The translations under genes were made by a program, and so were the position numbers. The notes under the pieces were generated by a model. The model saw only the letters and a list, made by a program, of their open reading frames with translations. It was not told the origin of the DNA and made no database searches. 64,000 nt of DNA from positions 57,102,001 through 57,166,000 of the forward strand of contig NC_043010.1 in assembly GCF_006345805.1 (NCBI RefSeq), given 5' to 3'. Positions 20,875 through 47,624 of this stretch are shown here, in pieces (within the stretch, counting starts at the first letter, position 1; each line of letters starts with the position of its first letter). Source of the stretch: Octopus sinensis (Eukaryota).

Positions 20875-20981
20875 TACATACACACACACACACACACACA
20901 TACATACATACATACATACACACACACACATACATACACACATACAGACATACATACATACAGACACATACATACATACAC

Positions 20982-21016
<35 letters not shown>

Positions 21017-21075
21017 TACATACATACATACATGCATACATACATACATACATGCATACATGCATACATACATAC

Positions 21076-21110
<35 letters not shown>
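20875..21110. repeat. (CA)n/(CATA)n microsatellite directly upstream of the His-rich peptide gene
   Basis: Direct reading of the sequence. Confidence 0.95.
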
Positions 21111-21168: not shown

Positions 21169-21223
21169 ATGAGACTAACAGCTGCTCTTGTGTTCCTTGT
21201 GGCTTTTGCCCTGATTGTCGGAG
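21169..21223 (+). CDS. His-rich peptide exon 1 (signal peptide)
   Basis: ATG AGA CTA ... GTC GGA G|GTAAGA; MRLTAALVFLVAFALIVG. Confidence 0.85.
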
Positions 21224-21901: not shown

Positions 21902-21941
<40 letters not shown>

Positions 21942-24076
21942 TATTATAAAAGGCAGATTTTATCTGCCTCCCTTTGGGAGTTATACAAATCTACAATATA
22001 GGATTTCTTCAATTACAATTTACCTAGCAGTTTTAAGAGTACAATGCATCGCGTCATGCCAGGTCCAGTTTTTAAAATTGAAACTCCAATGAAGCAAAAT
22101 TTACAGAAAACTCACATTCTGGTATGTGTGTCAAATGCTTTTCTTAGTCTGGTTTACACCACACGCAAACGCACACACACAGTGGGCAAGGAATAAAATG
22201 AAAGTAATTCACTTACTGTAGTGAGTGATTCTTTCACTCTGCTTCCACTTCCTCTTTACACACATAGAAAAAACTTTTATTTTTTTACATAAGTAATGAG
22301 AGCGAAAGAGACTAAGAGAAAGCGATTGTATGACGAGGGAAGTTCCTTTCAAGTTACCGTGCATGGGACTCATTGATGTACATGTGTGTGTGTGTGTGTG
22401 TTTGATGGAGTGTGGGAGACAGACACTATGTTGTGTAAGTGAAGTGCTTCTGTTAGTGTGTGTGAAGAGACAGAGAGAGTAATGTGTGAAAGAGAGAGAT
22501 AACTGAAATTTTTTACTCGGTTTATGTGTATATGTATGTATGCATGTGTGTGTGTGTGTATGTATGTGTGTGTGTATGTATGTATTTATATATAAAAGAA
22601 AGGTTGTGTCTCTGTCTACTCCGATTTAGATTCCTAACTACTCCCACATTTTGCGATGCAGTTTAAACCAAAACCGGGTATCTTATAGTCGTGATTCATA
22701 TCGAGCCTTCTGGGTATTAGCGCGCGTCTACGATGAGTCTATGATTTTACAAATAATTTACCATCATTTTTTTCCATTTTAATGCATATTTTTTAAAATA
22801 AACGGAAGTAACTCTCAAACTTCACCAATATGCGTGCTCATATGCGACGTAATATCACATCACCAGCATTTCCTCACACTCTCCTTGCACTTGGCGAAGG
22901 CAAAATACCAGGGATGAAAATGGTATATTGCCATCGATTCCATTTGTACCATTGTTAAGACGCCTTCTGATCTCAGAGATGCAGTGTTCCCAGATTTACA
23001 AGCTAATTATCAGAATATGGATTGGATTGGCAAAAAGGCTATACTGGCCCCGAGGAATAAAACTGTTCACATATTAATGAGGAAATGCTAAAACTCATTC
23101 CTGGGGAAGTCGATGTATATCAGTCTATCGATACAACTCCTGACCAGAGGACGTCATCAACTATCCAATAGAGGTACTCAATCCTTTGAGCACCCCGACT
23201 ACCACCACCTTTCTCAAACTTAAAGTTAGTGCCCCTATAATGCTCATCAGAAATTTGGTTCCCCCAAAACAATGCAAGCACACATTTGGCGTTAAGTCTT
23301 ATCTCCCACCGTAAGCTTATTTCAATCTTTGCCTGAATAATCATCATAATTCAGTGCAATCATTAACAGTACTTTCAAGCAATCAGCCCCGAGCAACGCC
23401 GGGCAATTCTGCTAGTATATATATATATATATCTTTTATCTTTCATCTTTTCCTGGTTTCAACCAGAGGCTGAGACCATGCTGGAGCTCCCCCTTTCAGT
23501 CTATTATCATTATTATTATTAAGGCAACCAGCTAACAGAATAGTTAGCATGCCAGGTGAAATGCATAGTGGCATTTCACCTGCCTTCATGTTCTGGGTTC
23601 AAATTCCACTGAGGTCGACTTTGCCTTTCATCCTTTCGGGGTTGATTAAATAAGTACCAGTTACACACTGGGGTTGATGTAATCAACTTAATCCCTCCCC
23701 TCAATTTCGAGGCTTTGTGCTTCCAGTAGAAAGAATTATTATTATTATTCAGTAGTTTTATTTTTATAGTGTGCTTTCACTTCACAACCGAGCACAGCTC
23801 TGTGTGCCTTGGGTATGTGCTGTGGTTTGTTGTGATGCTCTGATGGTTATTGTATGGAAAGTGTTCTGCGTAGGATGTGTGCAGTGCCTAGTAGTGCAAT
23901 TTTCTGTATGTTATATGTGTTTGTAAGTCCTGGTGTTTTTGTTATGTATTTGTCTGATTATTTTTTTATCATGCCTAATGCACCTACTATGATAGAGATT
24001 GTTTCTGTTTTTAGATTCCACATTCTGGTTACCTCTATTTCCAGGTCGTTGTATTTTGAAAGTTTCTCCTTTTCTC

Positions 24077-24223: not shown

Positions 24224-24782
24224 CAATGATGGTGATGGTGATGAACCTAAAATTGTTTGCAATTTGTTATGGTAATGTCCCCTCATCCATTGCCCTTCTG
24301 GCAAAAATAAAGAAATGTCGTTGTTGTTCTTGTCTGAGTGTTGGATTAGCAGAAGTGTTTGAGGCTGAGACAAGTTCAAATTCTGCTGAGGACAATATTG
24401 CTTTCATCTTTCTAGGGAGTCGATGGAATAAAGTACCAGTGGTGTCTTAGGGGTTTCAAATAATCAGTGAAACCCTTCCCTTCAATCTATGACTTTCTTC
24501 TAATGCTAGAAATACTGTTGTGTGGCTATATGTGCAGGAATGAAATTTGCTTAGGAGTTCAAATCTAGGTCTAACCTAGGATGTTTGAAGCATCTTCATT
24601 GCCATGCCCACCACCCAGCAAAATTTAGGGAGTGCACTTGCAACCCCTGCACCCTAATTTCTGACCCTATGGTTGTGGCTGTCGTTTTTGTTGTTGTTGT
24701 TAATTTTTATTTACCTTTTCTTTTTTATTCTTTTTACAGTTCAGTCTGGTCCTCGTAAGTACAACTTTTAGATGTAATCATG

Positions 24783-24844
<62 letters not shown>

Positions 24845-24913
24845 GTGCACCTGAGCACTTTATACAAGAAGTTCATTATATACATATACATAAATAAATA
24901 CATATACATATAC

Positions 24914-24951
<38 letters not shown>

Positions 24952-25240
24952 CTAGCATCACCTGACTGGCATCCGTGTCGGTGGCACCTAAAAGCACCAA
25001 CCGATCATCGCAATTTGCCAGCCTGCGCTGGCTCCTGTGCCGGTGGCACGTAAAAAACACCCACTACACTCACGGAGTGGTTGCTTTAGGAAGAACATCC
25101 AGCTGTAGAAACACTGCCAAATCAGACTGGAGCCTGGTGTAGCCTCCATGGCTTACCAGACCCCGGTCGAACCATCCAACCCATGCTAGCATGGAAAACG
25201 GACGTTAAATGATGATGATGATATATATATGTATACATAT

Positions 25241-25318
<78 letters not shown>

Positions 25319-25787
25319 TATATATTGTATAGGGGGGAGAATTCACGAAAGAAACAAATGATGAAGACAGGTGGTGTAGACAACAAACAGATGTATTAGT
25401 TTAACGCTCAGGAATTGAAAAAGCCTTTTATATTTCGAGCCTACGCTCTTCTACAGAAAGGAACACAGAAAGAAACAAGGAGAGAAACAGGAGAGAAAAA
25501 AATGTGTGTAGTGGCTAACGATCTATCATGGCAACTACCGGACAGAAGAGTCACACAGGAGAGCGAAGGTGATCCCCAAATATATATTATATTATATTAT
25601 ATATATATATTATATTATATATATATATATAATGGTCGTGACTTCTGGAACTTGACTGAGGAGAGAAAGCCAAGAATGAGCTGTCTTTTTTTGCCAGTCC
25701 TTCTAATTCTTGTTTCTCTTGTCTGCCGTTGTATCATCTGGCTGTCCGAATGTTTTATTGTCCTCTATTGCGTTTTTGTTCCATTGT

Positions 25788-25820
<33 letters not shown>

Positions 25821-26102
25821 GGATAAGATCGTTAATTTAAATTAAATAACGATCTTATCAAGTGGCCAGCATGGAAATAAAAACCTTCAAAGGTAATAAT
25901 TATTATTAAAATTATAACTACGAGATACTGCCATGCTGAAAATAGCAGCCAGGATCTGACTCTAAAACCACCTTAAGTGTTCATATAGCACAAGGAACAC
26001 TACTATATGAACACTTAAGGTGGTTTTAGAGTCAGATCCTGGCTGCTATTTTCAGCATGGTGGTATCTTGTAGATACCCTAAGTTATAATTTTAATGATA
26101 AT

Positions 26103-26138
<36 letters not shown>

Positions 26139-26809
26139 GGCGCAGGAGTGGCTGTGTGTTAAGTAGTTTGCTTACCAACAACATTGATCCGGGTTCAGTC
26201 CCACTGTGTGGCACCTTGGGCAAATGTCTTCTACTATAGCCTCAGGCTGGCCAAAGCCTTGTGAGTGGGTTTGGTAGACAGAAACTGAAAGAAGCCTGTT
26301 GTATATATGTATATATATATATATATATATATGCGTGTGTGTGTTTGTATGTCTGTGTTTGTCCCCGCCAACATCGTTTGACAACTGATGCTGGTGTGTT
26401 TATGTCCCTGTAACTTAGCAGTTCAGCAAAAGAGACCAATAGAATAAGTACTAGGCTTACAAAGAATAAGTCCTGGGGTTGATTTGCTTGACAAAAGTCG
26501 GTGCTCCAGCATGACCACAGTCAAATGACTGAAACAAGTAAAAAATAAAAAAAACATACATATACTTATACACACACATCCCTATCAGTTTGTCTACGTC
26601 ACTCTGTGTCTTCCTGTCTCTGCTTATATTTGTCTGTCTGTTTGTCTCACTGACCCGTTGCCATGGAAATGGGAAATCCAAGATGCTGCATAATCATTCC
26701 AATGTCATATTCCTTACACTTTCCAAACTTGAATGTCTTCTCAGCAGACCTCTCCCTTCTGACTAACATTAGGGTGATGCTTAGGTCAATATTAGGGGTT
26801 TATGGGTGT

Positions 26810-26844
<35 letters not shown>

Positions 26845-27858
26845 ACACACACACACACACACATTCATACACACATGTGCGCATGCACACACATATTCTT
26901 GCACACAAACTCACACACACATTCACACACATATTCACATACACACACACACTCACTCACAAACACACACACACATTCATACACATACACATGCATGCAC
27001 ACACATTTACACACACATTCTCACACACATACATTCATACACATATACGCATGCACACACACACATTCACACACACACACATGAACACATTCACACGCAT
27101 ATTCACATACACACACACACTCACAAACACACACACACATTCATACACATACACACGTATGCACACACATATTCACACACACACGTTCACACACACATTC
27201 TCACACACATACATTCATACACATACACACATGTTCATACATAGATATGCACACACACACGCACATTCACACACACACATACACACACCACACACACACA
27301 CATACACACTCACAAACACACACACACATACACACACCACACATACACACACACACACTATTGTTTCCTCTCTTATTAAAAATATTCTACATTTGTTTCA
27401 CCAGTTCCAGATGATGGACACACCCATCATGAACACCATCAACACGAAGGTAAGACATTTATCTTTGAGCTCCAGCAACCAGTTGAATAAACCCCTAGCA
27501 ACCACCTGAACAGACCCCCTAGCAACTAGTTCACTGAACCCTAGCAGTTATCTTCAGGTGGTTAAGTAGCTCTGAAATTGTCTGTAAACCACAGGTAATA
27601 GGGGTCCAGTTGGTCCTCTTACTTTATACCTTTACAATGTTAATTGGTCATTTTGGTCAACAAAGCCAGAATTCCATTGGTCATGGATTGGTTCTGTGTT
27701 TTACTGAAACCTGAAAAGCATGTAAGGAGTGGGGTCTTCCCACTAGAATGGACAAAAGTGCTAATATATGATATATGATTTATAAAAGCATGTAACATAC
27801 TAATAAATATCTGTAAATATAAAACCATCCAGATTTCTGAGTACCTCATTTCTTCTAA

Positions 27859-27893
<35 letters not shown>

Positions 27894-28246
27894 TTAGGAG
27901 GAAAAAGAAAATGGATATTGTGAAGTTGATAAATATTTATTATTAACAACAAATCAATCATTATCAGTTATGAGGCTAACATAACCTCTAATCGTGTTTG
28001 ATCTCCATGTGTCTAACACGCGTGGACATGCCTACAAAGTCAGAAAACAACACAGCTCCCATGACTTTCGGAAACATTTTTTCACGCTCAGAGTTGCTGA
28101 AGCATGGAACAAACTGCCTGTGTCAGTTGTTGACTGCCATGACACTGCATCTTTTAAGGCCCTCATGCTTTCCGAAATCCACCGAAACTACACCTGATTA
28201 TATATACACTTTAGATGAGTTGTAGTGCACCTGAGCACTGTACACA

Positions 28247-28284
<38 letters not shown>

Positions 28285-29675
28285 CATGTATGTACACACA
28301 CACACACACACACCCACACACACACACCCACACACACACACCCACCCACACCCACCCACACACACACACATGTAAGTTGAATGATAAATATAAAAATGAT
28401 GATCTTCTGAGACAGTGTTATTGTATTCTTTAATTTCAGGAAATTGTAACCATGGAAACCATCAGCATCACCATGATCACGATCGTGAGTATAATCTTCC
28501 TACACCTGTCACTCTTTTATACACCCCTCAATACTTTATACATCGTTCTTTTCTTTATACACCCCTCACAACTGACATAAAGTAGTTTACCTGTCCTATC
28601 TTTTACGGAACACCTCAGTGTATTAATATTGTTGCTGTTTAACCCTAGGGCAAAGCTAATCAAGGTCACCCTGGATCAATAAGGTTCCAGCTGTGACCTT
28701 CCCAACATTTTAGGAGTATGACAAGAGCTACATTATTCCATGTACCTTTCTTTGCTTATTCAAGATAGTAGATTTGAAGGAGATCTAGCTGCTATTTCTA
28801 GCAGAGACAGTAATTCAAGCACATGCCTGAGAAACCAGAACCCATGCTGGGGTGGCAGGGTGGTGGTGGCAGGGCCAGGGTCACAGATGGAGACTGGCCA
28901 GGGATACATCAAGCGATCAAAATATCTATGTATATACATATGTATACACATATGCATATGTATATACATATGTATACACATATGAGTGTGTATATACATA
29001 TGTATACACATATGCATATATATACTTTTCTACTCTAGGCACAAGGCCCAAAATTTTGGGGGAGGGGGCCAGTCGATTAAATCAACCCCAGTTCGCAACT
29101 GGTACTTAATTTATCGACCTCAAAAGGATGAAAGGCAAAGTCAACCTCGGCGGACACACACACACACACACGCACACACATACATACAATGGGCTTTTTT
29201 CAGTTTCCGTCTGCCAAATCCAAGCTTTTAGTCAGACTGGGGCTATAGTAGAAGACACTTGCCCAAGGTGCCAGGCAGTGGAATTGAACCAAGGACCGTG
29301 TGGTTGGGAAGAAAGCATCTTACCACACAGCCACACTTTGCTTTCATATAGAGTTTCCTGCCAAAGATCTTTTGACCCTTAGCTCCATACCTCAGCAGTC
29401 GCATGTTGATTTGTTTGTTGTGGGGAAGTCTGCTGGGATTCAACCAATGTTATAGAAACAACACGGATGCCAAACATATTGAATTCTTGAGAATGAGACT
29501 CTGAAAATCAAGAAACATTAAATGCGAAATTAGGAACTCTTTTGTTCAAAACAGGTAAAAAGAATCCAAGAAGAAGAAAATGATCTAAAATGAAAAAACA
29601 CAAAACTTGGACACAGTTGAGTAGTCAATGAGACACGAGTAAAAGAAAAACTGTTAACCATAAATATAAACATAG

Positions 29676-29734
<59 letters not shown>

Positions 29735-30396
29735 CATATATATATATAATAATATTAGGGAGTATGGCTCCAAACTTACAGGGAAAAATTAGATTTTGTA
29801 TTAAATCAAATTTCACAGTATAAAATATGAATTAGAGATAAAACCACTATTAGGCAACTCAAACACAAATTTACAAAATAACCAAGTTTGGATTTTGTGA
29901 TTTTCCAATGTCATAATTGGTAAAGAATTTTAATTAATGAATCTTTAAATATTTTCAGATGAGTCACACCATCAAGGAGGTAAGGGAACCATATTTTATA
30001 AATATGTGTGTGTGTGTGAATGCATGTTAGTATGTGTGAATGTGTGTATATATATGTGTATGTGTGAATGTGTGTTAGTGTGTGTGTGTTTAAAGGAAAA
30101 GAAAAGGGACAGGAAGAGAAGCTATCATATTAAATAAATAAACACAGTGAGTCGATGTTGACAGTGTAAATGCATTTTGCAGAGGTGAGCGTGTGGAGAG
30201 AGTGTCTCAGTGTTCTTTCACTTGGAGATAATACAATAATGTCTACTTAAGAATTTGGACAGTGCTATCATGTCCACAGGGTTCCATTAATCCTAAATAT
30301 CAGCCCCTGATTTAATTTCTTTCTAATCCTTTCCAATTTTTCCCTTTTCTCATGTTGTCTGTTTATTTCCTTTCAGAAGCTCAACCATCGAATTGA
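21169..30396 (+). CDS. Six-exon micro-exon gene for a 66-aa secreted His-rich peptide: MRLTAALVFLVAFALIVGVQSGPLPDDGHTHHEHHQHEGNCNHGNHQHHHDHDHESHHQGEAQPSN
   Basis: Exons 21169-21223, 24740-24754, 27405-27449, 28440-28484, 29959-29979, 30377-30396 (55+15+45+45+21+20 = 201 nt); canonical Yn-cag acceptors and GTAAG/GTGAG donors, all phase 1, one open frame; AATAAA near 30549. Confidence 0.82.
21937..22584 (+). mobile_element. Non-autonomous Helitron 5' portion
   Basis: Starts TC (tctcttattataaaaggcag) right after a (TA)n run; directly precedes the second Helitron. Confidence 0.5.
22585..23415 (+). mobile_element. Internally deleted Helitron with PIF1 helicase remnant
   Basis: KLFTNMRAH...AILAPRNK...YPIEVLN...LKLKVSAPIMLIRNL (PIF1 motifs, frameshifted); 3' hairpin gccccgagcaacgccgggc followed by CTAG|T at 23412-23416. 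Confidence 0.9.
23523..23750 (+). mobile_element. tRNA-derived SINE family B
   Basis: ggcaaccagctaacagaatagttagc...gttcaaattccactgaggtcgactttgcctttcatcctttcgggg...(att)n; relatives at 29030, 49220, 56575 and 60815. Confidence 0.85.
23752..24130 (-). mobile_element. R4/Dong-like LINE 3' end between (TAA)n tracts
   Basis: EKLSKYNDLEIEVTRMWNLKTETISIIVGALGMIKK...IQKIALLGTAHILRRTLS*. Confidence 0.85.
24740..24754 (+). CDS. His-rich peptide exon 2 (15-nt micro-exon, VQSGP)
   Basis: ttttttattctttttacag|TTCAGTCTGGTCCTC|gtaagt; supplies the likely V-Q-S signal cleavage site. Confidence 0.78.
24955..25222 (+). mobile_element. RTE 3' UTR fragment
   Basis: Same sequence as 10400-10690; further copies near 6312-6410, 17655-17790, 21415-21600, 41851-42133, 56745-56925 and 58392-58750. 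Confidence 0.88.
25896..26105. repeat. Long fold-back with a 58-bp perfect core and about 90-bp arms
   Basis: 25931-25988 is the exact reverse complement of 26003-26060; 14-nt loop; AT-rich outer arms also pair. Confidence 0.95.
26139..26548 (+). mobile_element. tRNA-derived SINE family A, full length
   Basis: ggcgcaggagtggctgtgtg... through gtcaaatgactgaaacaagtaaaaaataaa. Confidence 0.9.
26810..27358. repeat. Degenerate (CA)n/(CACAT) microsatellite ending about 45 nt before exon 3
   Basis: Direct reading of the sequence. Confidence 0.95.
27405..27449 (+). CDS. His-rich peptide exon 3 (LPDDGHTHHEHHQHE)
   Basis: tttgtttcaccag|TTCCAG ATGATGG...CACGAAG|gtaaga; in-frame alternative acceptor at 27411. 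Confidence 0.8.
27990..28272 (+). mobile_element. CR1-clade LINE 3' end
   Basis: TRGHAYKVRKQHSSHDFRKHFFTLRVAEAWNKLP (CR1 C-terminal motif) with (att)n tail; tail-only copy at about 24840. Confidence 0.88.
28440..28484 (+). CDS. His-rich peptide exon 4 (GNCNHGNHQHHHDHD)
   Basis: ttctttaatttcag|GAAATTGT...CACGATC|gtgagt. Confidence 0.82.
29030..29155 (-). mobile_element. SINE family B fragment
   Basis: Reverse complement of ccgaggttgactttgcctttcatccttttgaggtcgataaattaagtaccagttgcg. Confidence 0.8.
29185..29335 (-). mobile_element. SINE family A 5' fragment
   Basis: Reverse complement of ggctgtgtggtaagatgctttcttcccaaccacacggtcc...ggcagacggaaactgaaaaaagccc. Confidence 0.8.
29959..29979 (+). 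CDS. His-rich peptide exon 5 (21-nt micro-exon, HESHHQG)
   Basis: attttcag|ATGAGTCACACCATCAAGGAG|gtaagg. Confidence 0.78.
30377..30396 (+). CDS. His-rich peptide terminal exon (EAQPSN*)
   Basis: gtttatttcctttcag|AA GCT CAA CCA TCG AAT TGA; AATAAA about 150 nt downstream. Confidence 0.72.
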
Positions 30397-30598
30397 CCAG
30401 ATCAGCCAATAATGTTGGAAAGATGACCAGATCAGCCAATAATGTTATATTTAATGGCAACACATTAAATAAGATTGTTAAAGAGACAGACTTCAGTGTT
30501 CCTGATCATCATCTTTCCACCTCTTTATAACCGATATTACAACAGTTCAATAAATATTGATTGTCAACAAATTAACGTTTGATGTTTTGTGTGTGCAC

Positions 30599-31180: not shown

Positions 31181-34100
31181 TCTGGGATGAGGTGGTGAAG
31201 CATGAAGAGGTAGACCCAGGAAGACCTCGGATGAGGTGGTGAAGCATGAAGAGGTAGACCCAGGAATTCCTGGGATGAGGTGGTGAAGCATGAAGAGGTA
31301 GACCCAGGAAGACCTGGGATGAGGTGGTGAAGCATGAAGAGGTAGACCCAGGAAGACCTCGGATGAGGTGGTGAGCATGAAGAGGTAGACCAGGAATTCC
31401 TGGGATGAGGTGGTGAAGCATGAAGAGGTAGACCCAGGAAGATCTGGGAGAGGTGGTGAAGCATGAAGAGGTAGACTCAGGAAGACCTGGGAGAGGTGGT
31501 GAAGCAGCAGGTAGGAGAGGTAGACCCAGGAATTCTGGGATGATGTGGTGAAGCATGAAGAGTAGACCCAGGAAGACCTGGGATGATGGTGTGTGAAGCA
31601 TGAAGAGGTAGACCCAGGAAGACCTCGGATGAGGTGGTGAAGCATGAAGAGGTAGACCCAGGAATTCCTGGGATGAGGGGGTGAAGCATGAAGAGGTAGA
31701 CCCAGGAAGACCTGGGATGAGGTGGTGAAGCATGAAGAGGTAGACCCAGAAGACCTGGATGAGGTGGTGAAGCATGAAGAGTAGACCCAGGAATTCCTGG
31801 GATGAGGTGGTGAAGCATGAAGAGTAGACCCAGGAAGATCTGGGATGAGGTGGTGAAGCATGAAGAGGTAGAGACTCAGGAATTCCTGGATGAGGTGGTG
31901 AATGAATGGTGAAGCATGAAGAGGTAGACCCAGGAAGACCTGGGATGAGGTGGTGAAGCATGAAGAGGTAGACCCAGGAATTCCTGGGATGAGGTGGTGA
32001 AGCATGAAGAGGTAGACCCAGGAATTCCTGGGATGAGGTGGTGAAGCATGAAGAGGTAGACCCAGGAATTCCTGGGATGAGGTGGTGAAGCATGAAGAGG
32101 TAGACCCAGGAAGACCTGGGATGAGGTGGTGAAGCATGAAGAGGTAGACCCAGGAATTCCTGGGATGAGGTGGTGAAGCATGAAGAGGTAGACCCAGGAA
32201 TTCCTGGGATGAGGTGGTGAAGCATGAAGAGGTAGACCCAGGAATTCCTGGGATGATGTGGTGAAGCATGAAGAGGTAGACCCAGGAAGACCTGGGATGA
32301 GGTGGTGAAGCATGAAGAGGTAGACCCAGGAATTCCTGGGATGAGGTGGTGAAGCATGAAGAGGTAGACCCAGGAATTCCTGGGATGAGGTGGTGAAGCA
32401 TGAAGAGGTAGACCCAGGAATTCCTGGGATGTGATGAGGTGGTGAGATGATGAATGTTGTGAAGCAGAAAAGGTAGACCCAGGAAGACCTGGGATGATGG
32501 GTGGTGAAGCATGAAGAGGTAGACCCAGGAAGATCTGGGATGAGGTGGTGAAGCATGAAGAGGTAGACCCAGGAATTCCTGGGATGAGGTGGTGTGAAGC
32601 ATGAAGAGGTAGACCCAGGAAGACCTGGGATGAGGTGGTGAAGCATGAAAAGGTAGACCCAGGAAGACCTGGGATGAGGTGGTGAAGAATGAAGAGGTAG
32701 ACCAGGAATCCTGGGATGAGGTGGTGAAGCATGAAGAGGTAGACCCAGGAATTCCTGGGATGAGGTGGTGAAGCATGAAGAGGTAGACCCAGGAATTCCT
32801 GGGATGAGGTGGTGAAGCATGAAGAGGTAGACCCAGGAAGACCTGGGATGAGGTGGTGAAGCATGAAGAGGTAGACCCAGGAAGACCTGGGATGAGGTGG
32901 TGAAGCATGAAGAGGTAGACCCAGAAGACCTGGGATGAGGTGGTGTGAAGCATGAAGAGGTAGACCCAGGAAGACCTGGGATGAGGTGGTGAAGCATGAA
33001 GAGGTAGACCCAGGAAGACCTGGGATGAGGTGGTGTGAAGCATGAAGAGGTAGACCCAGGAAGATCTGGGATGAGGTGGTGAAGCATGAAAAGGTAGACT
33101 CAGGAAGACCTGGGATGAGGTGGTGAAGCATGAAGAGGTAGACCCAGGAATTCCTGGGATGAGGTGAAGCATGAGAGCATGAAGAGGTAGACCCAGGAAG
33201 ACCTGGGATGAGGTGGTGTGAAGCATGAAAAGGTAGACTCAGGAAGACCTGGGATGAGGTGGTGAAGCATGAAGAGGTAGACCCAGGAATTCCTGGGATG
33301 AGGTGGTGAAGCATGAAGAGGTAGACCCAGGAAGACCAGGGATGAGGTGTGAAGCATGAAGAGGTAGACCCAGGAAGACCTGGGATGAGGTGGTGAAGCA
33401 TGAAGAGGTAGACCCAGGAGACCTGGGATGAGGTGGTGAAGCATGAAGAGGTAGACCCAGGAAGACCTGGGATGAGGTGGTGAAGCATGAAGAGGTAGAC
33501 CCAGGAATTCCTGGGATGAGGTGGTGAAGCATGAAGAGGTAGACCCAGGAAGACCAGGGAGGTGGTGTGAAGACATGAAGAGGAGTAGACCCAGTGTGGA
33601 AAGACCTCGGATGAGGTGGTGAAGCATGAAGAGGTAGAGGTAGACCCAGGAAGACCGGGATGAGGTGGTGAAGCATGAAGAGGTAGACTCAGGAAGACCT
33701 GGGATGAGGTGGTGAAGCATGAGAGGTAGACCCAGGAAGTCTGGGATGAGGTGGTGAAGCATGAAGAGGTAGACCCAGGAAGACCTGGGATGAGGTGGTG
33801 AAGCATGAAGAGGTAGACCCAGAAGATCTGGGATGAGGTGGTGAAGCATGAAGAGGTAGACCCAGGAACCTGGGATGAGGTGGTGAAGCATGAAGAGGTA
33901 GACCCAGGAAGACCTGGATGATGTGGTGAAGCATGAGAGGTAGACCCAGGAAGACCTGGGATGAGGTGGTGAAGCATGAAGAGGTAGAACCAGGAAGACT
34001 GGGATGAGGTGGTGAAGCATGAAAAGGTAGACCCAGACGACCTGGGATGAGGTGGTGAAGCATGAAGAGGTAGACCCAGGAAGACCTGGGATGAGGTGGT

Positions 34101-37100
34101 GAAGCATGAAGAGGTAGACCAGGAATTCCTGGATGAGGTGTGAAGCATGAAGAGGTAGACCCAGGATTCCGGGATGAGGTGGTGAAGCATGAAGAGGTAG
34201 ACCAAGAAGACCTGGGATGATTTGGTGAAGCATGAAGAGGTAGACCCAGGAACCTGGATGAGGTGGTGAAGCATGAAGAGGTAGACCAGGAAGACCTGGG
34301 ATGAGGTGGTGAAGCATGAAGAGGTAGACCCAGGAAGACTGGGATGAGGTGGTGAAGCATGAAGAGGTAGACCCAGAGACCTGGGATGAGGTGGTGAAGC
34401 ATGAAGAGTAGACCCAGGAAGACCTGGGATGAGGTGGTGAAGCATGAAGAGGTAGACCCAGGAAGACCTGGGATGAGGTGGTGAAGCATGAAGAGGTAGA
34501 CCCAGGAAGACCTGGGATGAGGTGGTGAAGCATGAAGAGGTAGACCCAGGAATTCCTGGGATGAGGTGGTGAAGCATGAAGAGGTAGACCCAGGAAGACC
34601 TGGGATGAGGTGGTGAAGCATGAAGAGGTAGACCCAGGAAGACCTGGGATGAAGCATGAAGAGGTAGACCCAGGAATTCCTGGGATGAGGTGGTGAAGCA
34701 TGAAGAGGTAGACCCAGGAAGACCTGGGATGAGGTGGTGAAGCATGAAGAGGTAGACCCAGGAAGACCTGGGATGAGGTGGTGAAGCATGAAGAGGTAGA
34801 CCCAGGAAGACCTGGGATGAGGTGGTGAAGCATGAAGAGGTAGACCCAGGAAGACCTGGGATGAGGTGGTGAGCATGAAGAGGACCCAGGAAGACCTGGG
34901 ATGAGGTGGTGAAGCATGAAGAGGTAGACCCAGGAAGACCTGGGATGAGGTGGTGAAGCATGAAGAGGTAGACCCAGGAAGACCTGGGATGAGGTGGTGA
35001 AGCATGAAGAGGTAGACCCAGGAATTCCTGGGATGAGGTGGTGAAGCATGAAGAGGTAGACCCAGGAAGACCTGGGATGAGGTGGTGAAGCATGAAGAGG
35101 TAGACCCGGAAGACCTGGGATGAGGTGGTGAAGCATGAAGAGGTAGACCCAGGAAGACCTGGGATGAGGTGGTGAAGCATGAAGAGGTAGACCCAGGAAG
35201 ACCTGGGATGAGGTGGTGAAGCATGAAGAGGTAGACCCAGGAAGACCTGGGATGAGGTGGTGAAGCATGAAGAGGTAGACCCAGGAATTCCTGGGATGAG
35301 GTGGTGAAGCATGAAGAGGTAGACCCAGGAAGACCTGGGATGAGGTGGTGAAGCATGAAGAGGTAGACCCAGGAAGACCTGGGATGAGGTGGTGAAGCAT
35401 GAAGAGGTAGACCAGGAAGACCTGGGATGAGGTGGTGAAGCATGAAGAGGTAGACCCAGGAAGACCTGGGATGAGGTGGTGAAGCATGAAGAGGTAGACC
35501 CAGGAATTCCTGGGATGAGGTGGTGAAGCATGAAGAGGTAGACCCAGGAAGACCTGGGATGAGGTGGTGAAGCATGAAGAGGTAGACCCAAGAACCTGGA
35601 TGAGGTGGTGAAGCATGAAGAGGTAGACCCGGAAGACCTGGGATGAGGTGGTGAAGCATGAAGAGGTAGACCCAGGAAGACCTGGGATGAGGTGGTGAAG
35701 CATGAAGAGGTAGACCCAGGAAGACCTGGGATGAGGTGGTGAAGCATGAAGAGGTAGACCCAGGAATTCCTGGGATGAGGTGGTGAAGCATGAAGAGGTA
35801 GACCCAGGAAGACCTGGGATGAGGTGGTGAAGCATGAAGAGGTAGACCCAGGAAGACCTGGGATGAGGTGGTGAAGCATGAAGAGGTAGACCCAGGAAGA
35901 CCTGGGATGAAGCATGAAGAGGTAGACCCAGGAATTCCTGGGATGAGGTGGTGAAGCATGAAGAGGTAGACCCAGGAAGACCTGGGATGAGGTGGTGAAG
36001 CATGAAGAGGTAGACCCAGGAATTCCTGGGATGAGGTGGTGAAGCATGAAGAGGTAGACCCAGGAATTCCTGGGATGAGGTGGTGAAGCATGAAGAGGTA
36101 GACCCAGGAAGACCTGGGATGAGGTGGTGAAGCATGAAGAGGTAGACCCAGGAAGACCTGGGATGAGGTGGTGAAGCATGAAGAGGTAGACCCAGGAAGA
36201 CCTGGGATGAGGTGGTGAAGCATGAAGAGGTAGACCCAGGAAGACCTGGGATGAGGTGGTGAAGCATGAAGAGGTAGACCCAGGATACCTGGGATGTGGT
36301 GAAGCATGAAGAGGTAGACCCAGGAATTCCTGGGATGAGGTGGTGAAGCATGAAGAGGTAGACCCAGGAAGACCTGGGATGAGGTGGTGAAGCATGAAGA
36401 GGTAGACCCAGGAAGACCTGGGATGAGGTGGTGAAGCATGAAGAGGTAGACCCAGGAAGACCTGGGATGAGGTGGTGAAGCATGAAGAGGTAGACCCAGG
36501 AATTCCTGGGATGAGGTGGTGAAGCATGAAGAGGTAGACCCAGGAATTCCTGGGATGAGGTGGTGAAGCATGAAGAGGTAGACCCAGGAAGACCTGGGAT
36601 GAGGTGGTGAAGCATGAAGAGGTAGACCCAGGAAGACCTGGGATGATGTGGTGAAGCATGAAGAGGTAGACCCAGGAAGACCTGGGATGAGGTGGTGAAG
36701 CATGAAGAGGTAGACCCAGGAAGACCTGGGATGAGGTGGTGAAGCATGAAGAGGTAGACCCAGGAAGACCTGGGATGAGGTGTGAAGCATGAAGAGGTAG
36801 ACCCAGGAAGACCTGGGATGAGGTGGTGAAGCATGAAGAGGTAGACCCAGGATCCTGGATGAGGTGGTGAAGCATGAAGAGGTAGACCCAGGAAGACCTG
36901 GGATGAGGTGGTGAAGCATGAAGAGGTAGACCCAGGAAGACCTGGGATGAGGTGGTGAAGCATGAAGAGGTAGACCCAGGAATTCCTGGGATGAGGTGGT
37001 GAAGCATGAAGAGGTAGACCCAGGAAGACCTGGGATGAGGTGGTGAAGCATGAAGAGGTAGACCCAGGAAGACCTGGGATGAGGTGGTGAAGCATGAAGA

Positions 37101-40100
37101 GGTAGACCCAGGAAGACCTGGGATGAGGTGGTGAAGCATGAAGAGGTAGACCCAGGAAGACCTGGGATGAGGTGGTGAAGCATGAAGGTAGACCCAGGAA
37201 GACCTGGGATGAGTGGTGAAGCATGAAGAGGTAGACCCAGGAAGACCTGGGATGAGGTGTGAAGCATGAAGAGGTAGACCCAGGAAGACCTGGGATGAGG
37301 TGGTGAAGCATGAAGAGGTAGACCCAGGAAGACCTGGGATGAGGTGGTGAAGCATGAAGAGGTAGACCCAGGAAGACCTGGGATGAGGTGGTGAAGCATG
37401 AAGAGGTAGACCCAGGAAGACCTGGGATGAGGTGGTGAAGCATGAAGAGGTAGACCCAGGAAGACCTGGGATGAGGTGGTGAAGCATGAAGAGGTAGACC
37501 CAGGAAGACCTGGGATGAGGTGGTGAAGCATGAAGAGGTAGACCCAGGAAGACCTGGGATGAGGTGGTGAAGCATGAAGAGTAGACCCAGAAGACCTGGG
37601 ATGAGGTGGTGAAGCATGAAGAGGTAGACCCAGGAAGACCTGGGATGAGGTGTGAAGCATGAAGAGGTAGACCCAGGAAGACCTGGGATGAGGTGGTGAA
37701 GCATGAAGAGGTAGAGACCCAGGAAGACCTGGGATGAGGTGGTGAAGCATGAAGAGGTAGACCCAGGAACCTGGGATGAGGTGGTGAAGCATGAAGAGGT
37801 AGACCCAGGAAGACCTGGGATGAGGTGGTGAAGCATGAAGAGGTAGACCCAGGAAGACCTGGGATGAGGTGGTGAAGCATGAAGAGGTAGACCAGGAAGA
37901 CCTGGGATGAGGTGGTGAAGCATGAAGAGGTAGACCCAGGAAGACCTGGGATGAGGTGGTGAAGCATGAAGAGGTAGACCCAGGAAGACCTGGGATGTGG
38001 TGAAGCATGAAGAGGTAGACCCAGAAGACCTGGGATGAGGTGGTGAAGCATGAAGAGGTAGACCCAGGAAGACCTGGGATGAGGTGGTGAAGCATGAAGA
38101 GGTAGACCAAGGAAGACCTGGGATGAGGTAGTGAAGCATGAAGAGGTAGACCCAGAAAGACTGGGATGAGGTGGTGAAGCATGAAGAGGTAGACCCAGGA
38201 AGACCTGGGATGAGGTGGTGAAGCATGAAGAGGTAGACCCAGGAAGACCTGGGATGAGGTGGTGAAGCATGAAGAGGTAGACCCAGGAAGACCTGGGATG
38301 AGGTGGTGAAGCATGAAGAGGTAGACCCAGGAAGACCTGGGATGAGGTGGTGAAGCATGAAGAGGTAGACCCAGGAAGACCTGGGATGAGGTGGTGAAGC
38401 ATGAAGAGGTAGACCCAGAAGACCTGGGATGAGGTGGTGAAGCATGAAGAGGTAGCCCAGGAAGACCTGGGATGAGGTGGTGAAGCATGAAGAGGTAGAC
38501 CCAGGAGACCTGGGATGAGGTGGTGAAGCATGAAGAGGTAGACCCAGAAGACCTGGGATGAGGTGGTGAAGCATGAAGAGGTAGACCCAGGAAGACCTGG
38601 GATGAGGTGGTGAAGCATGAAGAGGTAGACCCAGGAAGACCTGGGATGAGGTGGTGAAGCATGAAGAGGTAGACCCAGGAAGACCTGGGATGAGGTGTGT
38701 GAAGCATGAAGAGGTAGACCCAGGAAGACCTGGGATGAGGTGGTGAAGCATGAAGAGGTAGACCCAGGAGACCTGGGATGAGGTGGTGAAGCATGAAGAG
38801 GTAGACCCAGGAAGCCTGGGATGAGGTGGTGAAGCATGAAGAGGTAGACCCAGGAAGACCTGGGATGAGGTGGTGAAGCATGAAGAGGTAGACCCAGGAA
38901 GACCTGGGATGAGGTGGTGAAGCATGAAGAGGTAGACCCAGGAAGACCTGGGATGAGGTGGTGAAGCATGAAGAGGTAGACCCAGGAAGACCTGGGATGA
39001 GGTGGTGAAGCATGAAGAGGTAGACCCAGGAAGACCTGGGATGAGGTGGTGAAGCATGAAGAGGTAGACCCAGGAAGACCTGGGATGAGGTGGTGAAGCA
39101 TGAAGAGGTAGACCCAGGAAGACCTGGGATGAGGGGTGAAGCATGAAGAGGTAGACCCAGGAAGACCTGGGATGAGGTGGTGAAGCATGAAGAGGTAGAC
39201 CCAGGAAGACCTGGGATGAGGTGGTGAAGCATGAAGAGGTAGACCCAGGAAGACCTGGGATGAGGTGGTGAAGCATGAAGAGGTAGACCCAGGAATTCCT
39301 GGGATGAGGTGGTGAAGCATGAAGAGGTAGACCCAGGAAGACCTGGGATGAGGTGGTGAAGCATGAAGAGGTAGACCCAGGAAGACCTGGGATGAGGTGG
39401 TGAAGCATGAAGAGGTAGACCCAGAAGACCTGGGATGAGGTGGTGAAGCATGAAGAGGTGACGCCAGGAAGACCTGGGATGAGGTGGTGAAGCATGAAGA
39501 GGTAGACCCAGGAAGACCTGGGATGAGGTGGTGAAGCATGAAGAGGTAGACCCAGGAAGATCCTGGATGAGGTGGTGAAGCATGAAGAGGTAGACCCAGG
39601 AAGACCTGGGATGAGGTGGTGAAGCATGAAGAGGTAGACCCAGGAAGACCTGGGATGAGGTGGTGAAGCATGAAGAGGTAGACCCAGGAAGACCTGGGAT
39701 GAGGTGGTGAAGCATGAAGAGGTAGACCCAGGAAGACCTGGGATGAGGTGGTGAAGCATGAAGAGGTAGACCCAGGAAGATCTGGGATGAGGTGGTGAAG
39801 CATGAAGGTAGACCCAGGAAGACCTGATGAGGTGGTGAAGCATGAAGAGGTAGACCCAGGAAGACCTGGGATGAGGTGGTGAAGCATGAAGAGGTAGACC
39901 CAGGAAGACCTGGGATGAGGTGGTGAAGCATGAAGAGGTAGACCCAGGAAGACCTGGGATGAGGTGGTGAAGCATGAAGAGGTAGACCCAGGAAGACCTG
40001 GGATGAGGTGGTGAAGCATGAAGAGGTAGACCCAGGAAGACCTGGGATGAGGTGGTGAAGCATGAAGAGGTAGACCCAGGAAGACCTGGGATGAGGTGGT

Positions 40101-41260
40101 GAAGCATGAAGAGGTAGACCCAGGAAGACCTGGGATGAGGTGGTGAAGCATGAAGAGGTAGACCCAGGAAGACCTGGGATGAGGTGGTGAAGCATGAAGA
40201 GGTAGACCCAGGAAGACCTGGGATGAGGTGGTGAAGCATGAAGAGGTAGACCCAGGAAGATCTGGGATGAGGTGGTGAAGCATGAAGAGGTAGACCCAGG
40301 AAGACCTGGGATGAGGTGGTGAAGCATGAAGAGGTAGACCCAGGAAGACCTGGGATGAGGTGGTGAAGCATGAAGAGGTAGACCCAGGAAGACCTGGGAT
40401 GAGGTGGTGAAGCATGAAGAGGTAGACCCAGGAAGACCTGGGATGAGGTGGTGAAGCATGAAGAGGTAGACCCAGGAAGACCTGGGATGAGGTGGTGAAG
40501 CATGAAGAGGTAGACCCAGGAAGACCTGGGATGAGGTGGTGAAGCATGAAGAGGTAGACCCAGGAATTCCTGGGATGAGGTGGTGAAGCATGAAGAGGTA
40601 GACCCAGGAAGACCTGGGATGAGGTGGTGAAGCATGAAGAGGTAGACCCAGGAAGACCTGGGATGAGGTGGTGAAGCATGAAGAGGTAGACCCAGGAAGA
40701 CCTGGGATGAGGTGGTGAAGCATGAAGAGGTAGACCCAGGAAGACCTGGGATGAGGTGGTGAAGCATGAAGAGGTAGACCCAGGAAGACCTGGGATGAGG
40801 TGGTGAAGCATGAAGAGGTAGACCCGGAAGACCTGGGATGAGGTGGTGAAGCATGAAGAGGTAGACCCAGAAGACCTGGGATGAGGTGGTGAAGCATGAA
40901 GAGGTAGACCCAGAAGACCTGGGATGAGGTGGTGAAGCATGAAGAGGTAGACCCAGGAAGATCTGGGATGAGGTGGTGAAGCATGAAGAGGTAGACCCAG
41001 GAAGACCTGGGATGAGGTGGTGAAGCATGAAGAGGTAGACCCAGGAGACCTGGGATGAGGTGGTGAAGCATGAAGAGGTATACCCAGGAAGACCTGGGAT
41101 GAGGTGGTGAAGCATGAAGAGGTAGACCCAGGAAGACCTGGGATGAGGTGGTGAAGCATGAAAGGTAGACCCAGGAATTCCTGGGATGAGGTGGTGAAGC
41201 ATGAAGAGGTAGACCCAGGAAGACCTGGGATGAGGTGGTGAAGCATGAAGAGGTAGAACC
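31181..41260 (+). repeat. 10-kb satellite array of a 44-bp RTE-derived monomer (about 230 copies)
   Basis: Consensus AGAGGTAGACCCAGGAAGACCTGGGATGAGGTGGTGAAGCATGA, head to tail without spacers; 41/44 identical to RTE positions 10049-10092. Confidence 0.98.
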
Positions 41261-42133: not shown

Positions 42134-42708
42134 TATGTATATGAATATAGACTATGATATGCAACCCCATTATAGAACCAATGGTTGGATTGATTGATTG
42201 ATTAATTAGTTAATCAATTAATGAATTCATAATTTAATTGATTGGTTGGCTGATTAATAAGTTGAGCTAATTAAATCTAGAGCTACCTCCCTTGGTTTTA
42301 TTTATAAATAAACCCCGAACTCCACGGCATCTCTTAAATATAACATTAAAAGTAATTAGATAAATAAATAGATGGATAGATATTTTGAAGGACTAAATGA
42401 CTTAGGGGTTTATTAATTAATTGACTTAACAATATTACTTGGAATCTTGCATTTTAGGCATTTTGTCAGATATAATAGATTTGAAGGAATTTTGAGCGTA
42501 ATTTTACACCCAAAATAAACATGTTGAGACAATATATACGGTCACTTTTGATGTTTTATCCCTCCTTTGAGTTTGGTCCAACTGGCTTCCGGCATGTATT
42601 TTTAACCATATGGTACCCATATAAGTTAGTAAATATATTAATGATTTCCCTAGTTAGACTTATACATGTAATATTTTATAAGGGTCTTTTAAAATAAATT
42701 TGTAATAC

Positions 42709-43355
42709 AGCCAGGATCCCTGGCCTGGTGGTACGTAAAAAGCACTATCCGACTCGGGGCCGTGGCACGTAAAATACTCCAATGCGACCGTACGACAGGC
42801 ACCCATGCCAACCCCCTTTGCTTGTGAAGACATGTTGGGGCAAGCGAAATCGAAATCGAATTGAACCAGCCAGGATCCCTGGTCTGGTGGTACGTAAAAA
42901 GCACTATCCGACTCGTGGCCGTGGCACGTAAAATACTCCAATGCGACCGTACGACTGGCACCCTTGCCAACCCCCTTTGCTTGTGAAGACATGTTGGGGC
43001 AAGCGAAATCGAAATCGAATTGAACCAGCCAGAATCCCTGGTCTGGTGGTACGTAAAAAGCACTATCCGACTCGTGGCCGATGCCAGCACCGCCTCGACT
43101 GGCTTCCGTGCCGGTGGCACATAAAATACACCAATCTGACTGTGGCCGTTGCCAGCCCCGCCTGGCACCTGTGCAGGTGGCACGTAAAAAGCACCCACTA
43201 CACTCACGGAGTGGTTGGCGTTAGGAAGGGCATCCAGCTGTAGAAACATTGCCAAATTAGACTGGAGCCTGGTGCAGCCTTCTGGCTTCCCAGAACCCCG
43301 GTCGAACCGTCCAACCCATGCTAGCATGGAGAACGGACGTTAAACGACGATGATT
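42709..43355 (+). mobile_element. Young RTE 3' UTR copy with 2.3 tandem copies of a 159-bp unit
   Basis: Units start at 42709, 42868 and 43027 (agccaggatccctgg...gaaatcgaattgaacc); CpG-rich; canonical tail acggacgttaaacgacgatg. Confidence 0.9.
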
Positions 43356-46975: not shown

Positions 46976-47624
46976 TAGATACATGTGAGTATATACAGAG
47001 GTGGATCTACCATAAAACTAATGAAGCCTAAGCTTCAGGGGCCCCTAATCCTGGAGGAGTCCCTCTGAAGCAACTTAATTTTTTCATTCTATCAATATAT
47101 TTTTGTTTTTGTATTTTGCCATACAGATTATTGTCCCCAGTCTCGGTGGATGTCATCTCACACTCCTAGGCAGAGTCTAGATATGCCATGTCTAGCCACG
47201 AGTTGTGCACCTGTTGTTCCTGCTGCTGTGGAGTAGCATAAAAATTAAAAGTACAGAATGACTTGCAGATAATTTGCTTTACTTGAATTATTTTGGAAAC
47301 TTTGGCCCTGCCCCTCCCATTGTCAAATATGTCTACTTCTACTACTACTACTACTACTACTCTGGTAGAGATAAGAATTCTTATTTTCACACCATTACTT
47401 AAAGACCAATGGAAAGGTTTGCCTCCTAATTTTGGACTTACAATCTGTTCAGTAACAAAGCAATTTTTCTCCTTTAAAAATTGCCAGGGTCAGTTGCACC
47501 CAACGCACTTTGCAAAGGGCTTTCAGTGCATTGGCTGCATCTTGCTGTGTTACCAGCACCAGACAGGTTGTCATGTCTTTCGCAGGGAAAAATGGTTTAT
47601 CTGTCTGTCTGTCTGTCTATCTAT

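What the first reader, a model, noticed from the sequence alone, without database searches (positions are those of the whole stretch)
24740..29979. Symmetric phase-1 micro-exons born by exon duplication: a tunable His-module cassette
Seen: every internal exon is a multiple of 3 (15, 45, 45, 21) and phase 1-1, so any subset can be skipped in frame. Exons 3 and 4 are both 45 nt and align (gatggacacacccatcatgaacaccatcaacacga vs catggaaac---catcagcatcaccatgatcacga); exon 5 resembles their 3' half. Exon 3 also has tandem acceptors 6 nt apart (27405/27411). Established: this architecture defines schistosome micro-exon genes (MEGs), which diversify secreted proteins by exon skipping. Inference: combinatorial splicing could vary His number and metal capacity; more micro-exons may remain undetected in these introns.
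Basis: partly seen in the sequence, partly recalled or inferred. Interest (0 to 1): 0.7.

Follow-up and report, generated by a model that had tools for sequence, protein, structure and literature searches.

The report
Octopus histidine-rich secreted peptide micro-exon gene
The four tiny in-frame exons are real parts of an octopus-only gene for a small secreted, histidine-rich (probably metal-binding) peptide, but neither their origin by exon duplication nor mix-and-match splicing is shown by any available data.

Summary
All are phase 1-1 with canonical AG/GT sites.

With a signal-peptide exon (21169-21223) and a short last exon (30377-30396) they give a 66-aa protein. The Octopus vulgaris protein CAI9733572.1 uses exactly exons 1-5. 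An O. bimaculoides model carries exons 1-3. No other relative exists among 1.84 billion representative proteins, so this is an octopus-restricted orphan.

An unbiased scan shows that such exons do not arise by chance. It finds no further strong His-rich micro-exon in the introns.

Exon 3/4 similarity is no greater than codon composition gives (P 0.13-0.19), and the flanking introns share only (CA)n, so exon duplication is unproven. All 24 exon and acceptor combinations stay in frame, but no isoform evidence exists. The one hint is that the two species' models differ by exactly the 6-nt tandem acceptor.

The likeness to schistosome micro-exon genes (MEGs) is architectural, not homologous.

Unexpectedly, sense-strand (CA)n tracts lie 48-235 nt upstream of exon 1 and of each His exon.

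Most likely product: an acidic, 33%-His, disordered secreted peptide that chelates metals.

The parts
21169..21223 (+). Exon 1 coding part. ATG plus MRLTAALVFLVAFALIVG, a signal-peptide-like sequence, then donor G|GTAAGA in phase 1.
   Evidence: It is the only signal-peptide-like first exon with a strong donor on either strand of the 64-kb window. It is identical in O. vulgaris.
24740..24754 (+). Exon 2, 15 nt, phase 1-1. It encodes (V)QSGP and holds the likely signal-peptidase site VQS|GP.
   Evidence: a T-rich tract plus AG upstream, GTAAGT downstream. Present in the O. vulgaris protein P0001. Found by a composition-blind symmetric-exon scan.
27405..27449 (+). Exon 3, 45 nt, phase 1-1, encoding (L)PDDGHTHHEHHQHE. 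An alternative acceptor at 27411 gives a 39-nt exon.
   Evidence: The O. vulgaris model uses 27405. The O. bimaculoides model is collinear with use of 27411.
28440..28484 (+). Exon 4, 45 nt, phase 1-1, encoding (G)NCNHGNHQHHHDHD. It carries the only Cys of the mature peptide.
29959..29979 (+). Exon 5, 21 nt, phase 1-1, encoding (H)ESHHQG.
30377..30396 (+). Proximal candidate last exon, coding part (E)AQPSN plus TGA. An AATAAA lies at 30549-30554. This is my model and is not used by the O. vulgaris annotation.
   Evidence: a strong pyrimidine tract plus AG. It is identical with its flanks in O. vulgaris. No transcript evidence is available.
47127..47236 (+). Distal alternative last exon, as used in the O. 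vulgaris model. In the window it reads (D)YCPQSRWMSSHTPRQSLDMPCLATSCAPVVPAAVE plus TAG. It lies beyond the 10-kb minisatellite.
   Evidence: It is single-copy. It has 3 amino-acid changes in 36 against O. vulgaris. No other protein shares it.
20881..21109 (+). Sense-strand (CA)n / (CATA)n tract ending 60 nt before the ATG. It is followed by (TA)n, which could act as a TATA element.
26813..27357 (+). Degenerate CA-rich tract of about 550 nt, ending 48 nt before exon 3.
   Evidence: Its local similarity to exon 3 scores 15 against a null of 10.1 (P = 0.018, uncorrected for 15 tests).
28295..28370 (+). (CA)n / CCCA tract ending 70 nt before exon 4.
29679..29724 (+). (CA)n tract ending 235 nt before exon 5.

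Best explanation
This is a real gene restricted to the genus Octopus. It has six coding exons on the + strand.

Exon 1 encodes a signal peptide. Four symmetric phase-1 micro-exons of 15, 45 (or 39), 45 and 21 nt, plus a very short last exon, encode the mature product. That product is about 45 residues long: GPLPDDGHTHHEHHQHEGNCNHGNHQHHHDHDHESHHQGEAQPSN. It is 33% His, has 8 Asp/Glu, no Lys or Arg, and one Cys.

Shown: the exon structure, the frame, the orphan status and the non-chance nature of the exons.

Inferred:
- The peptide is secreted and intrinsically disordered.
- It works by chelating divalent transition metals (Zn, Cu, Ni) through clustered imidazoles and carboxylates.
- Its calculated net charge flips from about -7 at pH 7 to about +4 at pH 5.5. 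It would therefore act as a metal buffer or sequestering peptide, or as a pH-switchable peptide, in an extracellular fluid or secretion.

The uniform 1-1 phase is best read as the footprint of stepwise exon gain inside one ancestral phase-1 intron that followed the signal-peptide exon. Any exon added there must be 1-1 symmetric to be tolerated. It need not be a device selected for exon shuffling at the RNA level. Splicing is probably mostly constitutive, with a possible 6-nt choice at the exon 3 acceptor.
For: Gene model and frame.

Homologues:
- The O. vulgaris protein CAI9733572.1 (P0001) contains exons 1-5 residue for residue, apart from one E/D change.
- That annotation pipeline combined Iso-Seq and RNA-seq transcripts with protein alignments and ab initio calls (PMC10700109).
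- O. bimaculoides A0A0L8H5U5 (P0002) is collinear, at 49 = 49 aa with 39 identical, with window exon 1 + exon 2 + the 39-nt form of exon 3 + retained intron 3. The locus therefore predates the roughly 34-My split quoted.
- Nothing else turns up among 5.8 billion clustered or 1.84 billion representative proteins. There is no Pfam family above threshold and no PDB relative.

The exons are not chance.

Composition and charge.
Against: - I could reach no transcript, peptide or expression data, so the tissue is unknown.
- The window is only 1.5% diverged from O. vulgaris. Exon conservation therefore cannot be separated from neutrality: 1 substitution in 201 nt of CDS against about 3 expected.
- Against O. 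bimaculoides, the coding part is 81% identical at the amino-acid level and the read-through intron part 77%, which is no different.
- The 3' end is ambiguous, with a proximal exon at 30377 and a distal exon at 47127.
- Metal binding is inferred from composition alone.
Confidence: 0.55

Rival explanations
1. This is a MEG-like cassette whose His exons arose by tandem exon duplication. Combinatorial skipping, plus the tandem acceptor, tunes the number of His residues and so the metal capacity.
For: - All 24 combinations stay in frame, giving 0-16 His.
- Exons 3 and 4 have the same length and phase, and both end in CAC-GA(A/T).
- Each lies 48-70 nt downstream of a sense (CA)n tract, as if a (CA)n+exon unit had been copied.
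- The species' models differ by exactly the 6 nt of the tandem acceptor.
- CA-rich RNA is a known binding site for a splicing regulator in mammals (hnRNP L; PMC5959245).
Against: - Exon similarity is within the codon-shuffle null (P 0.13-0.19).
- The spacers and flanks do not align.
- The only full-length model includes all four exons.
- No skipped isoform is present in the protein collection.
- There are only 4 micro-exons.
Confidence: 0.2
2. De novo origin from microsatellites. The His-rich exons, built of CAY codons, were exonised from degenerate sense-strand CA-rich repeats. The promoter and 5' end also sit on (CA)n/(TA)n. The gene would then be a young orphan built from simple-sequence DNA.
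For: - 21 of the 33 sense (CA)>=6 runs of the window lie in this 9.7-kb gene.
- Exons 1, 3, 4 and 5 start 60, 48, 70 and 235 nt after such a tract. For random positions only 5.6% lie within 100 nt.
- Exon 3 aligns to the upstream CA-rich tract at 26/29 with two 1-nt gaps (score 15 against a null of 10.1, P = 0.018).
- The gene is an orphan.
Against: - The P value does not survive correction for the 15 tests made.
- Exons 4 and 5 show no such similarity.
- His-rich coding sequence is CA-rich by necessity.
- The exons contain no perfect repeat.
- The association was noticed post hoc.
Confidence: 0.15
3. The open reading frame is not translated. The locus would give a non-coding or spurious transcript, and the short ORF would be an annotation artefact.
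For: - No purifying selection is detectable with the data available.
- The O. vulgaris and O. bimaculoides models disagree on the 3' part.
- The protein is short and of low complexity.
Against: - Six exons with canonical sites keep one frame, starting with a textbook signal peptide.
- Such exons occur nowhere else in 81 kb of control strand.
- All six His residues of exon 3 are kept in O. bimaculoides.
Confidence: 0.1

Closest known systems
Schistosome micro-exon genes (MEGs)
   Same: - A 5' exon encodes the signal peptide.
- Most of the mature coding sequence (126 of 201 nt) lies in short symmetric exons that are multiples of 3 and separated by kb-scale introns.
- The product is small, secreted and taxonomically restricted.
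   Different: - There is no sequence homology.
- There are 4 micro-exons, not 10-20.
- The exons of 15-45 nt fall within the MEG range of 6-81 nt, but the MEG motifs are absent.
- No alternative splicing has been shown.
- The host is a free-living mollusc, not a blood fluke.
Secreted His-rich metal-binding peptides and regions: histatins, the His-rich region of histidine-rich glycoprotein, and His-rich loops of ZIP transporters
   Same: - Clustered HxH and HH motifs and about one third His, with metal chelation and pH-dependent charge expected.
- UniRef labels the O. vulgaris orthologue 'Histidine-rich glycoprotein-like'.
- There is a weak sub-threshold Pfam Zip match on the His stretch (E = 0.23).
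   Different: - No significant similarity to any of them.
- It is acidic with no Lys or Arg, whereas histatins are cationic (my own knowledge).
- It has no cystatin or other domain, and it is much smaller than histidine-rich glycoprotein.
Squid histidine-rich beak proteins and suckerins
   Same: They are cephalopod-specific, secreted and His-rich.
   Different: These families were reported absent from O. bimaculoides (PMC9068888). No similarity was found. The peptide here is far shorter and lacks their Gly/Ala-rich repeats (my own knowledge).
Tandem (NAGNAG-type) alternative acceptors
   Same: Two AG dinucleotides lie in frame a few nt apart at one 3' splice site, giving a 2-codon indel.
   Different: The spacing is 6 nt rather than 3. 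Use of both sites within one species has not been shown.

Membership tests
Schistosome MEG superfamily | Sequence homology to a MEG family | tested here: not met
   phmmer against 1.84 billion representatives and the word-indexed search of 5.8 billion proteins find only two Octopus proteins.
Schistosome MEG superfamily | Most of the CDS lies in many (10-20) symmetric micro-exons of 6-81 bp, each a multiple of 3 | tested here: inconclusive
   Exon sizes and symmetry are met: 15, 45, 45 and 21 nt, or 63% of the CDS. There are only 4 such exons, against 10-20 in MEGs.
Schistosome MEG superfamily | N-terminal signal peptide encoded by the 5' exon | tested here: met
   MRLTAALVFLVAFALIVG has a basic residue at position 2, a 15-residue hydrophobic core and VQS|G at -3/-1. 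It was the single hit of a heuristic scan. No dedicated signal-peptide predictor was available.
Schistosome MEG superfamily | Protein variation produced by alternative use of the micro-exons | not testable with these tools
   No transcript data are reachable. The exon-skipped and alternative-acceptor proteins I looked up are absent from the collection.
Schistosome MEG superfamily | Restricted to Schistosomatidae | tested here: not met
   The locus is 98.5% identical at aligned positions to O. vulgaris chromosome record OX597827.1.
Exon-duplication-derived repeat exons | Exon-to-exon similarity beyond what composition gives, and/or similarity of the flanking introns | tested here: not met
   Codon-shuffle tests give P 0.13-0.19. 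The flanks share only (CA)n. The test has low power on 45 nt.
Histidine-rich glycoprotein (HRG) | Cystatin-like domains plus a GHHPH-type repeat region, with sequence homology | tested here: not met
   No Pfam domain above threshold and no homologues outside Octopus. The database name is compositional.
His-rich metal-chelating secreted peptides (a functional class) | High His density with clustered HxH/HH motifs in a secreted, disordered peptide | tested here: met
   15 His in the 45-residue mature peptide, with 8 Asp/Glu, pI 5.9 and a signal peptide.
His-rich metal-chelating secreted peptides (a functional class) | Measured binding of Zn, Cu or Ni | not testable with these tools
   This needs calorimetry or spectroscopy on the peptide.
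Tandem alternative acceptor | Two in-frame AGs at one 3' splice site, both of them used | tested here: inconclusive
   AGs end at 27404 and 27410. The O. vulgaris model uses the first. The O. bimaculoides model has exactly the length expected from the second, but a 6-nt deletion in that species cannot be excluded.

The most novel reading that the evidence does not exclude
An octopus-lineage micro-exon gene that converged on the schistosome MEG design. Its His-coding exons would have been exonised from sense-strand CA microsatellites. The same CA-rich RNA would recruit an hnRNP-L-type factor that sets exon inclusion. The animal could then secrete a graded series of metal-binding peptides (0-16 His) from one locus.
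Probability: 0.08. Interest if true: 0.7.

Novelty: new member of a known kind. Interest (0 to 1): 0.35.

Why it matters
This would be a clean, small example of how a lineage-specific secreted peptide gene is built from micro-exons inside one phase-1 intron. It could also show simple-sequence DNA giving rise to coding exons.

If the peptide binds metals, it bears on copper and zinc handling, or on nutritional immunity, in an animal whose oxygen carrier is copper-based.

At present it is one uncharacterised hypothetical protein, with a tidy gene structure and no functional data.

Tried and rejected
1. The purine-rich block at 31182-41257 as a giant coding exon of this gene. Rejected. It is a 44-bp minisatellite, and 44 is not a multiple of 3. 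The + strand has stops. The long minus-strand ORFs follow simply from a unit that lacks stop triplets; by my own estimate, about 12% of random 44-mers would do the same.
2. Exon conservation against O. vulgaris. No power, at 1.5% divergence.
3. The O. bimaculoides locus. Its protein is not on record for DNA retrieval, so exon number across species could not be compared.
4. Paralogues in the window or in the O. vulgaris locus. None found.
5. Remote homologues. None found.
6. The distal last exon as part of another protein family. No hit; an earlier attempt failed because the query was too short.
7. Isoforms in public protein collections. The two full-length models with either acceptor and either last exon, two intron-3-retention products and three single-exon-skipped products were all absent.
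8. Literature on this gene, or on His-rich octopus peptides. Nothing specific.
9. The spliced 66-aa model could not be submitted to the representative search, so P0001 was used instead.
10. A composition-blind scan gave two extra weak symmetric candidates. One is 26246-26260, which by my reading lies inside a SINE-like repeat. The other is 28765-28809, 45 nt and not His-rich. Neither has any supporting evidence.
Full report
WHAT IS THERE

Reading 24500-30200 confirms the four segments exactly as described. All four are multiples of three.

| Exon | Coordinates | Length | Context |
|---|---|---|---|
| 2 | 24740-24754 | 15 nt | T-rich tract + AG upstream, GTAAGT downstream |
| 3 | 27405-27449 | 45 nt | AG\|TTCCAG\|AT..., with a second AG 6 nt on, so the exon can also start at 27411 |
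| 4 | 28440-28484 | 45 nt | GTGAGT donor |
| 5 | 29959-29979 | 21 nt | GTAAGG donor |

Upstream there is an ATG at 21169. It is followed by MRLTAALVFLVAFALIVG and a G|GTAAGA donor in phase 1.

Downstream, a strong acceptor at 30377 opens AA GCT CAA CCA TCG AAT TGA. An AATAAA follows about 150 nt later.

Spliced together these give a 201-nt ORF of 66 codons: MRLTAALVFLVAFALIVGVQSGPLPDDGHTHHEHHQHEGNCNHGNHQHHHDHDHESHHQGEAQPSN.

INDEPENDENT SUPPORT

A search of 5.8 billion clustered proteins returned two hits only.

- P0001 is O. vulgaris CAI9733572.1 / A0AA36BH55. The sources call it 'Hypothetical predicted protein' and 'Histidine-rich glycoprotein-like'. It is 96 aa. Its first 60 residues are exons 1-5 of the window with one E-to-D change. 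It then continues into a different last exon.
- P0002 is O. bimaculoides A0A0L8H5U5, 49 aa.

A full HMMER pass over 1.84 billion representatives found nothing else. Pfam and PDB give nothing above threshold.

The O. vulgaris locus (L001; OX597827.1, GCA_951406725.2) is collinear with the window. It differs by 1.5% substitutions. That fits a sister taxon such as O. sinensis, which split 2.5 My ago according to PMC10700109; the species assignment is my inference.

All exon sequences and their splice sites are identical in L001 except for one base in exon 3.

The O. vulgaris annotation combined Iso-Seq and RNA-seq transcript models with protein alignments and ab initio predictions. I think a 15-nt exon is unlikely to come from ab initio prediction alone. 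I could not inspect the reads.

IS IT MORE THAN CHANCE?

I ran three scans.

- His-rich symmetric exons. I looked for phase-1-symmetric, stop-free AG..GT segments of 9-90 nt with at least 25% His, a pyrimidine tract of at least 0.6 and a donor match of at least 5/6. The scan finds exon 3 (both acceptors), exon 4 and exon 5. It finds nothing on the opposite strand and nothing in four other 9-kb blocks on both strands.
- Composition-blind version. This recovers exons 2, 3 and 4 plus two unsupported extras.
- Signal-peptide-like first exons. A scan of both strands of the whole window for such an exon with a strong donor finds only 21169-21223.

So the exons are real features. There is no sign of further His-rich micro-exons hidden in the introns.

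EXON DUPLICATION

- Against codon-shuffled versions of exon 4, the best local score is 14 vs 11.2 +/- 2.0 (P = 0.13).
- In-register identity is 22/45 vs 19.2 (P = 0.19).
- Exon 3 / exon 5 share a 10-mer (P = 0.13). Exon 4 / exon 5 give P = 0.67.
- The 120-nt intron flanks show no similarity, apart from the (CA)n tract upstream of both exons 3 and 4.

The test has little power on 45 nt. Equal length and phase remain suggestive. Even so, duplication is not demonstrated.

The uniform phase does not need duplication. Once a signal-peptide exon is followed by a phase-1 intron, any exon later gained in that intron must be 1-1 symmetric to preserve the frame. This holds whether the exon came by duplication or by exonisation (inference).

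AN UNEXPECTED REGULARITY

Sense-strand (CA)n tracts end shortly before several exons:

| Exon | Distance from the end of the nearest upstream (CA)n tract |
|---|---|
| 1 | 60 nt |
| 3 | 48 nt |
| 4 | 70 nt |
| 5 | 235 nt |

- Only 5.6% of random window positions lie within 100 nt downstream of such a tract.
- 21 of the window's 33 sense (CA)>=6 runs lie in this 9.7-kb gene, against only 3 (TG)n runs.
- Exon 3 aligns to the 550-nt degenerate CA-rich tract upstream of it at 26/29 with two 1-nt gaps. This gives P = 0.018, which does not survive correction for 15 tests. Exons 4 and 5 do not align to any tract.

Three readings remain open:
- exonisation of degenerate microsatellite sequence, since His codons are CAY;
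- duplication of a (CA)n+exon unit;
- CA-rich RNA acting as a splicing-regulator site, as hnRNP L uses in mammals (PMC5959245).

The association was noticed post hoc.

ALTERNATIVE SPLICING

By arithmetic, every one of the 24 exon-subset and acceptor combinations keeps the frame and ends at the same stop. His counts range from 0 to 16.

The evidence for actual use is thin.

- The O. vulgaris model includes all four exons and the upstream acceptor.
- The O. bimaculoides protein is exactly as long as the window's exon 1 + exon 2 + the 39-nt form of exon 3 + read-through of intron 3 up to its first stop. Both are 49 aa, with 39 identical and no gaps.
- The two species' models therefore differ by precisely the 6 nt between the tandem acceptors. 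A 6-nt deletion in O. bimaculoides would look the same.
- None of the nine predicted isoform or model proteins I looked up is in the 15-billion-protein collection.

THE 3' END

The O. vulgaris model skips the proximal exon at 30377. It joins exon 5 to an exon at window 47127-47236, on the far side of the 10-kb minisatellite.

- That distal exon is single-copy.
- It matches no other protein.
- It carries 3 amino-acid changes in 36 between the two genomes.

The proximal exon is identical with its flanks and has a nearby AATAAA. Which one is used, or whether both are, cannot be settled here.

HOW IT PROBABLY WORKS (inference)

Cleavage after VQS would release a peptide of about 45 residues and 5.2 kDa. 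It has 15 His, 8 Asp/Glu, no Lys or Arg, and one Cys. Its pI is 5.9. The calculated charge is about -7 at pH 7 and about +4 at pH 5.5.

Such a peptide is expected to be disordered and to chelate Zn2+, Cu2+ or Ni2+ through HxH and HH clusters and carboxylates. It may dimerise through the single Cys.

Plausible roles are extracellular metal buffering or sequestration, or a pH-switched activity in a secretion. The tissue is unknown.

COMPARISON WITH KNOWN SYSTEMS

- Schistosome MEGs. The architecture resembles them: a signal-peptide exon, symmetric micro-exons that are multiples of 3, long introns and a small secreted orphan product. But there is no homology, there are only four micro-exons, and no splicing variation has been shown. 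It works like a MEG only potentially, and it is not a member.
- Histidine-rich glycoprotein. The 'histidine-rich glycoprotein-like' label reflects composition only.
- Squid His-rich beak proteins and suckerins. These were reported absent from octopus, and they are unrelated by sequence.

VERDICT

This is a real and neatly built octopus-specific micro-exon gene for a His-rich secreted peptide. It is already present as an unnamed model in one annotation, and no paper in the library I searched describes it.

The structural observation holds. The evolutionary claim (duplication) and the functional claim (tunable cassette) are unproven. Interest is moderate to low until transcript data are examined.

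Noticed in passing
window 31182-41257: A 44-bp minisatellite of about 230 copies at 93% match, purine-rich on the + strand. Because the unit has no stop triplet on the minus strand, all three minus-strand frames stay open, giving ORFs of up to 3404 aa. The array is about 10.1 kb here and about 14.6 kb in O. vulgaris (L001 18502-33061). It lies inside the last intron of the O. vulgaris gene model.
   Followed up: partly
window 20881-21109, 26813-27357, 28295-28370, 29679-29724: Sense-strand (CA)n tracts end 60, 48, 70 and 235 nt upstream of exon 1 and His exons 3, 4 and 5. 21 of the window's 33 sense (CA)>=6 runs lie in this 9.7-kb gene. This may bear on how the exons arose or on how their splicing is controlled.
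   Followed up: partly
window 25896-26105 (intron 2): A foldback, MITE-like inverted repeat. Its arms are 25915-25988 and 26003-26076 (74 nt, 95% complementary, 14-nt loop). Arms 25896-25919 and 26082-26105 extend it. (TA)n lies on both sides.
   Followed up: partly
window 21940-23415 (intron 1): A 1475-bp stretch present in the window but absent from the O. vulgaris locus. It is probably a recent insertion, or a deletion in the other lineage.
   Followed up: no
window 28765-28809 (intron 4): A further 45-nt, phase-1-symmetric, stop-free AG..GT segment (SRFEGDLAAISSRD) with a good pyrimidine tract and a GTAATT donor. It is not His-rich and has no supporting evidence.
   Followed up: no
window 1335-2271 (-), 9365-10141 (+), 27985-28194 (+): ORF fragments that, by my reading of the translations, look like pieces of reverse-transcriptase / LINE-type retroelements. 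Several SINE-like copies are also present, for example around 26140-26300 and 29190-29330. The introns are mostly repeats.
   Followed up: no
window 42708-43000: A 159-bp tandem repeat of 1.8 copies at 97% match, just downstream of the minisatellite.
   Followed up: no
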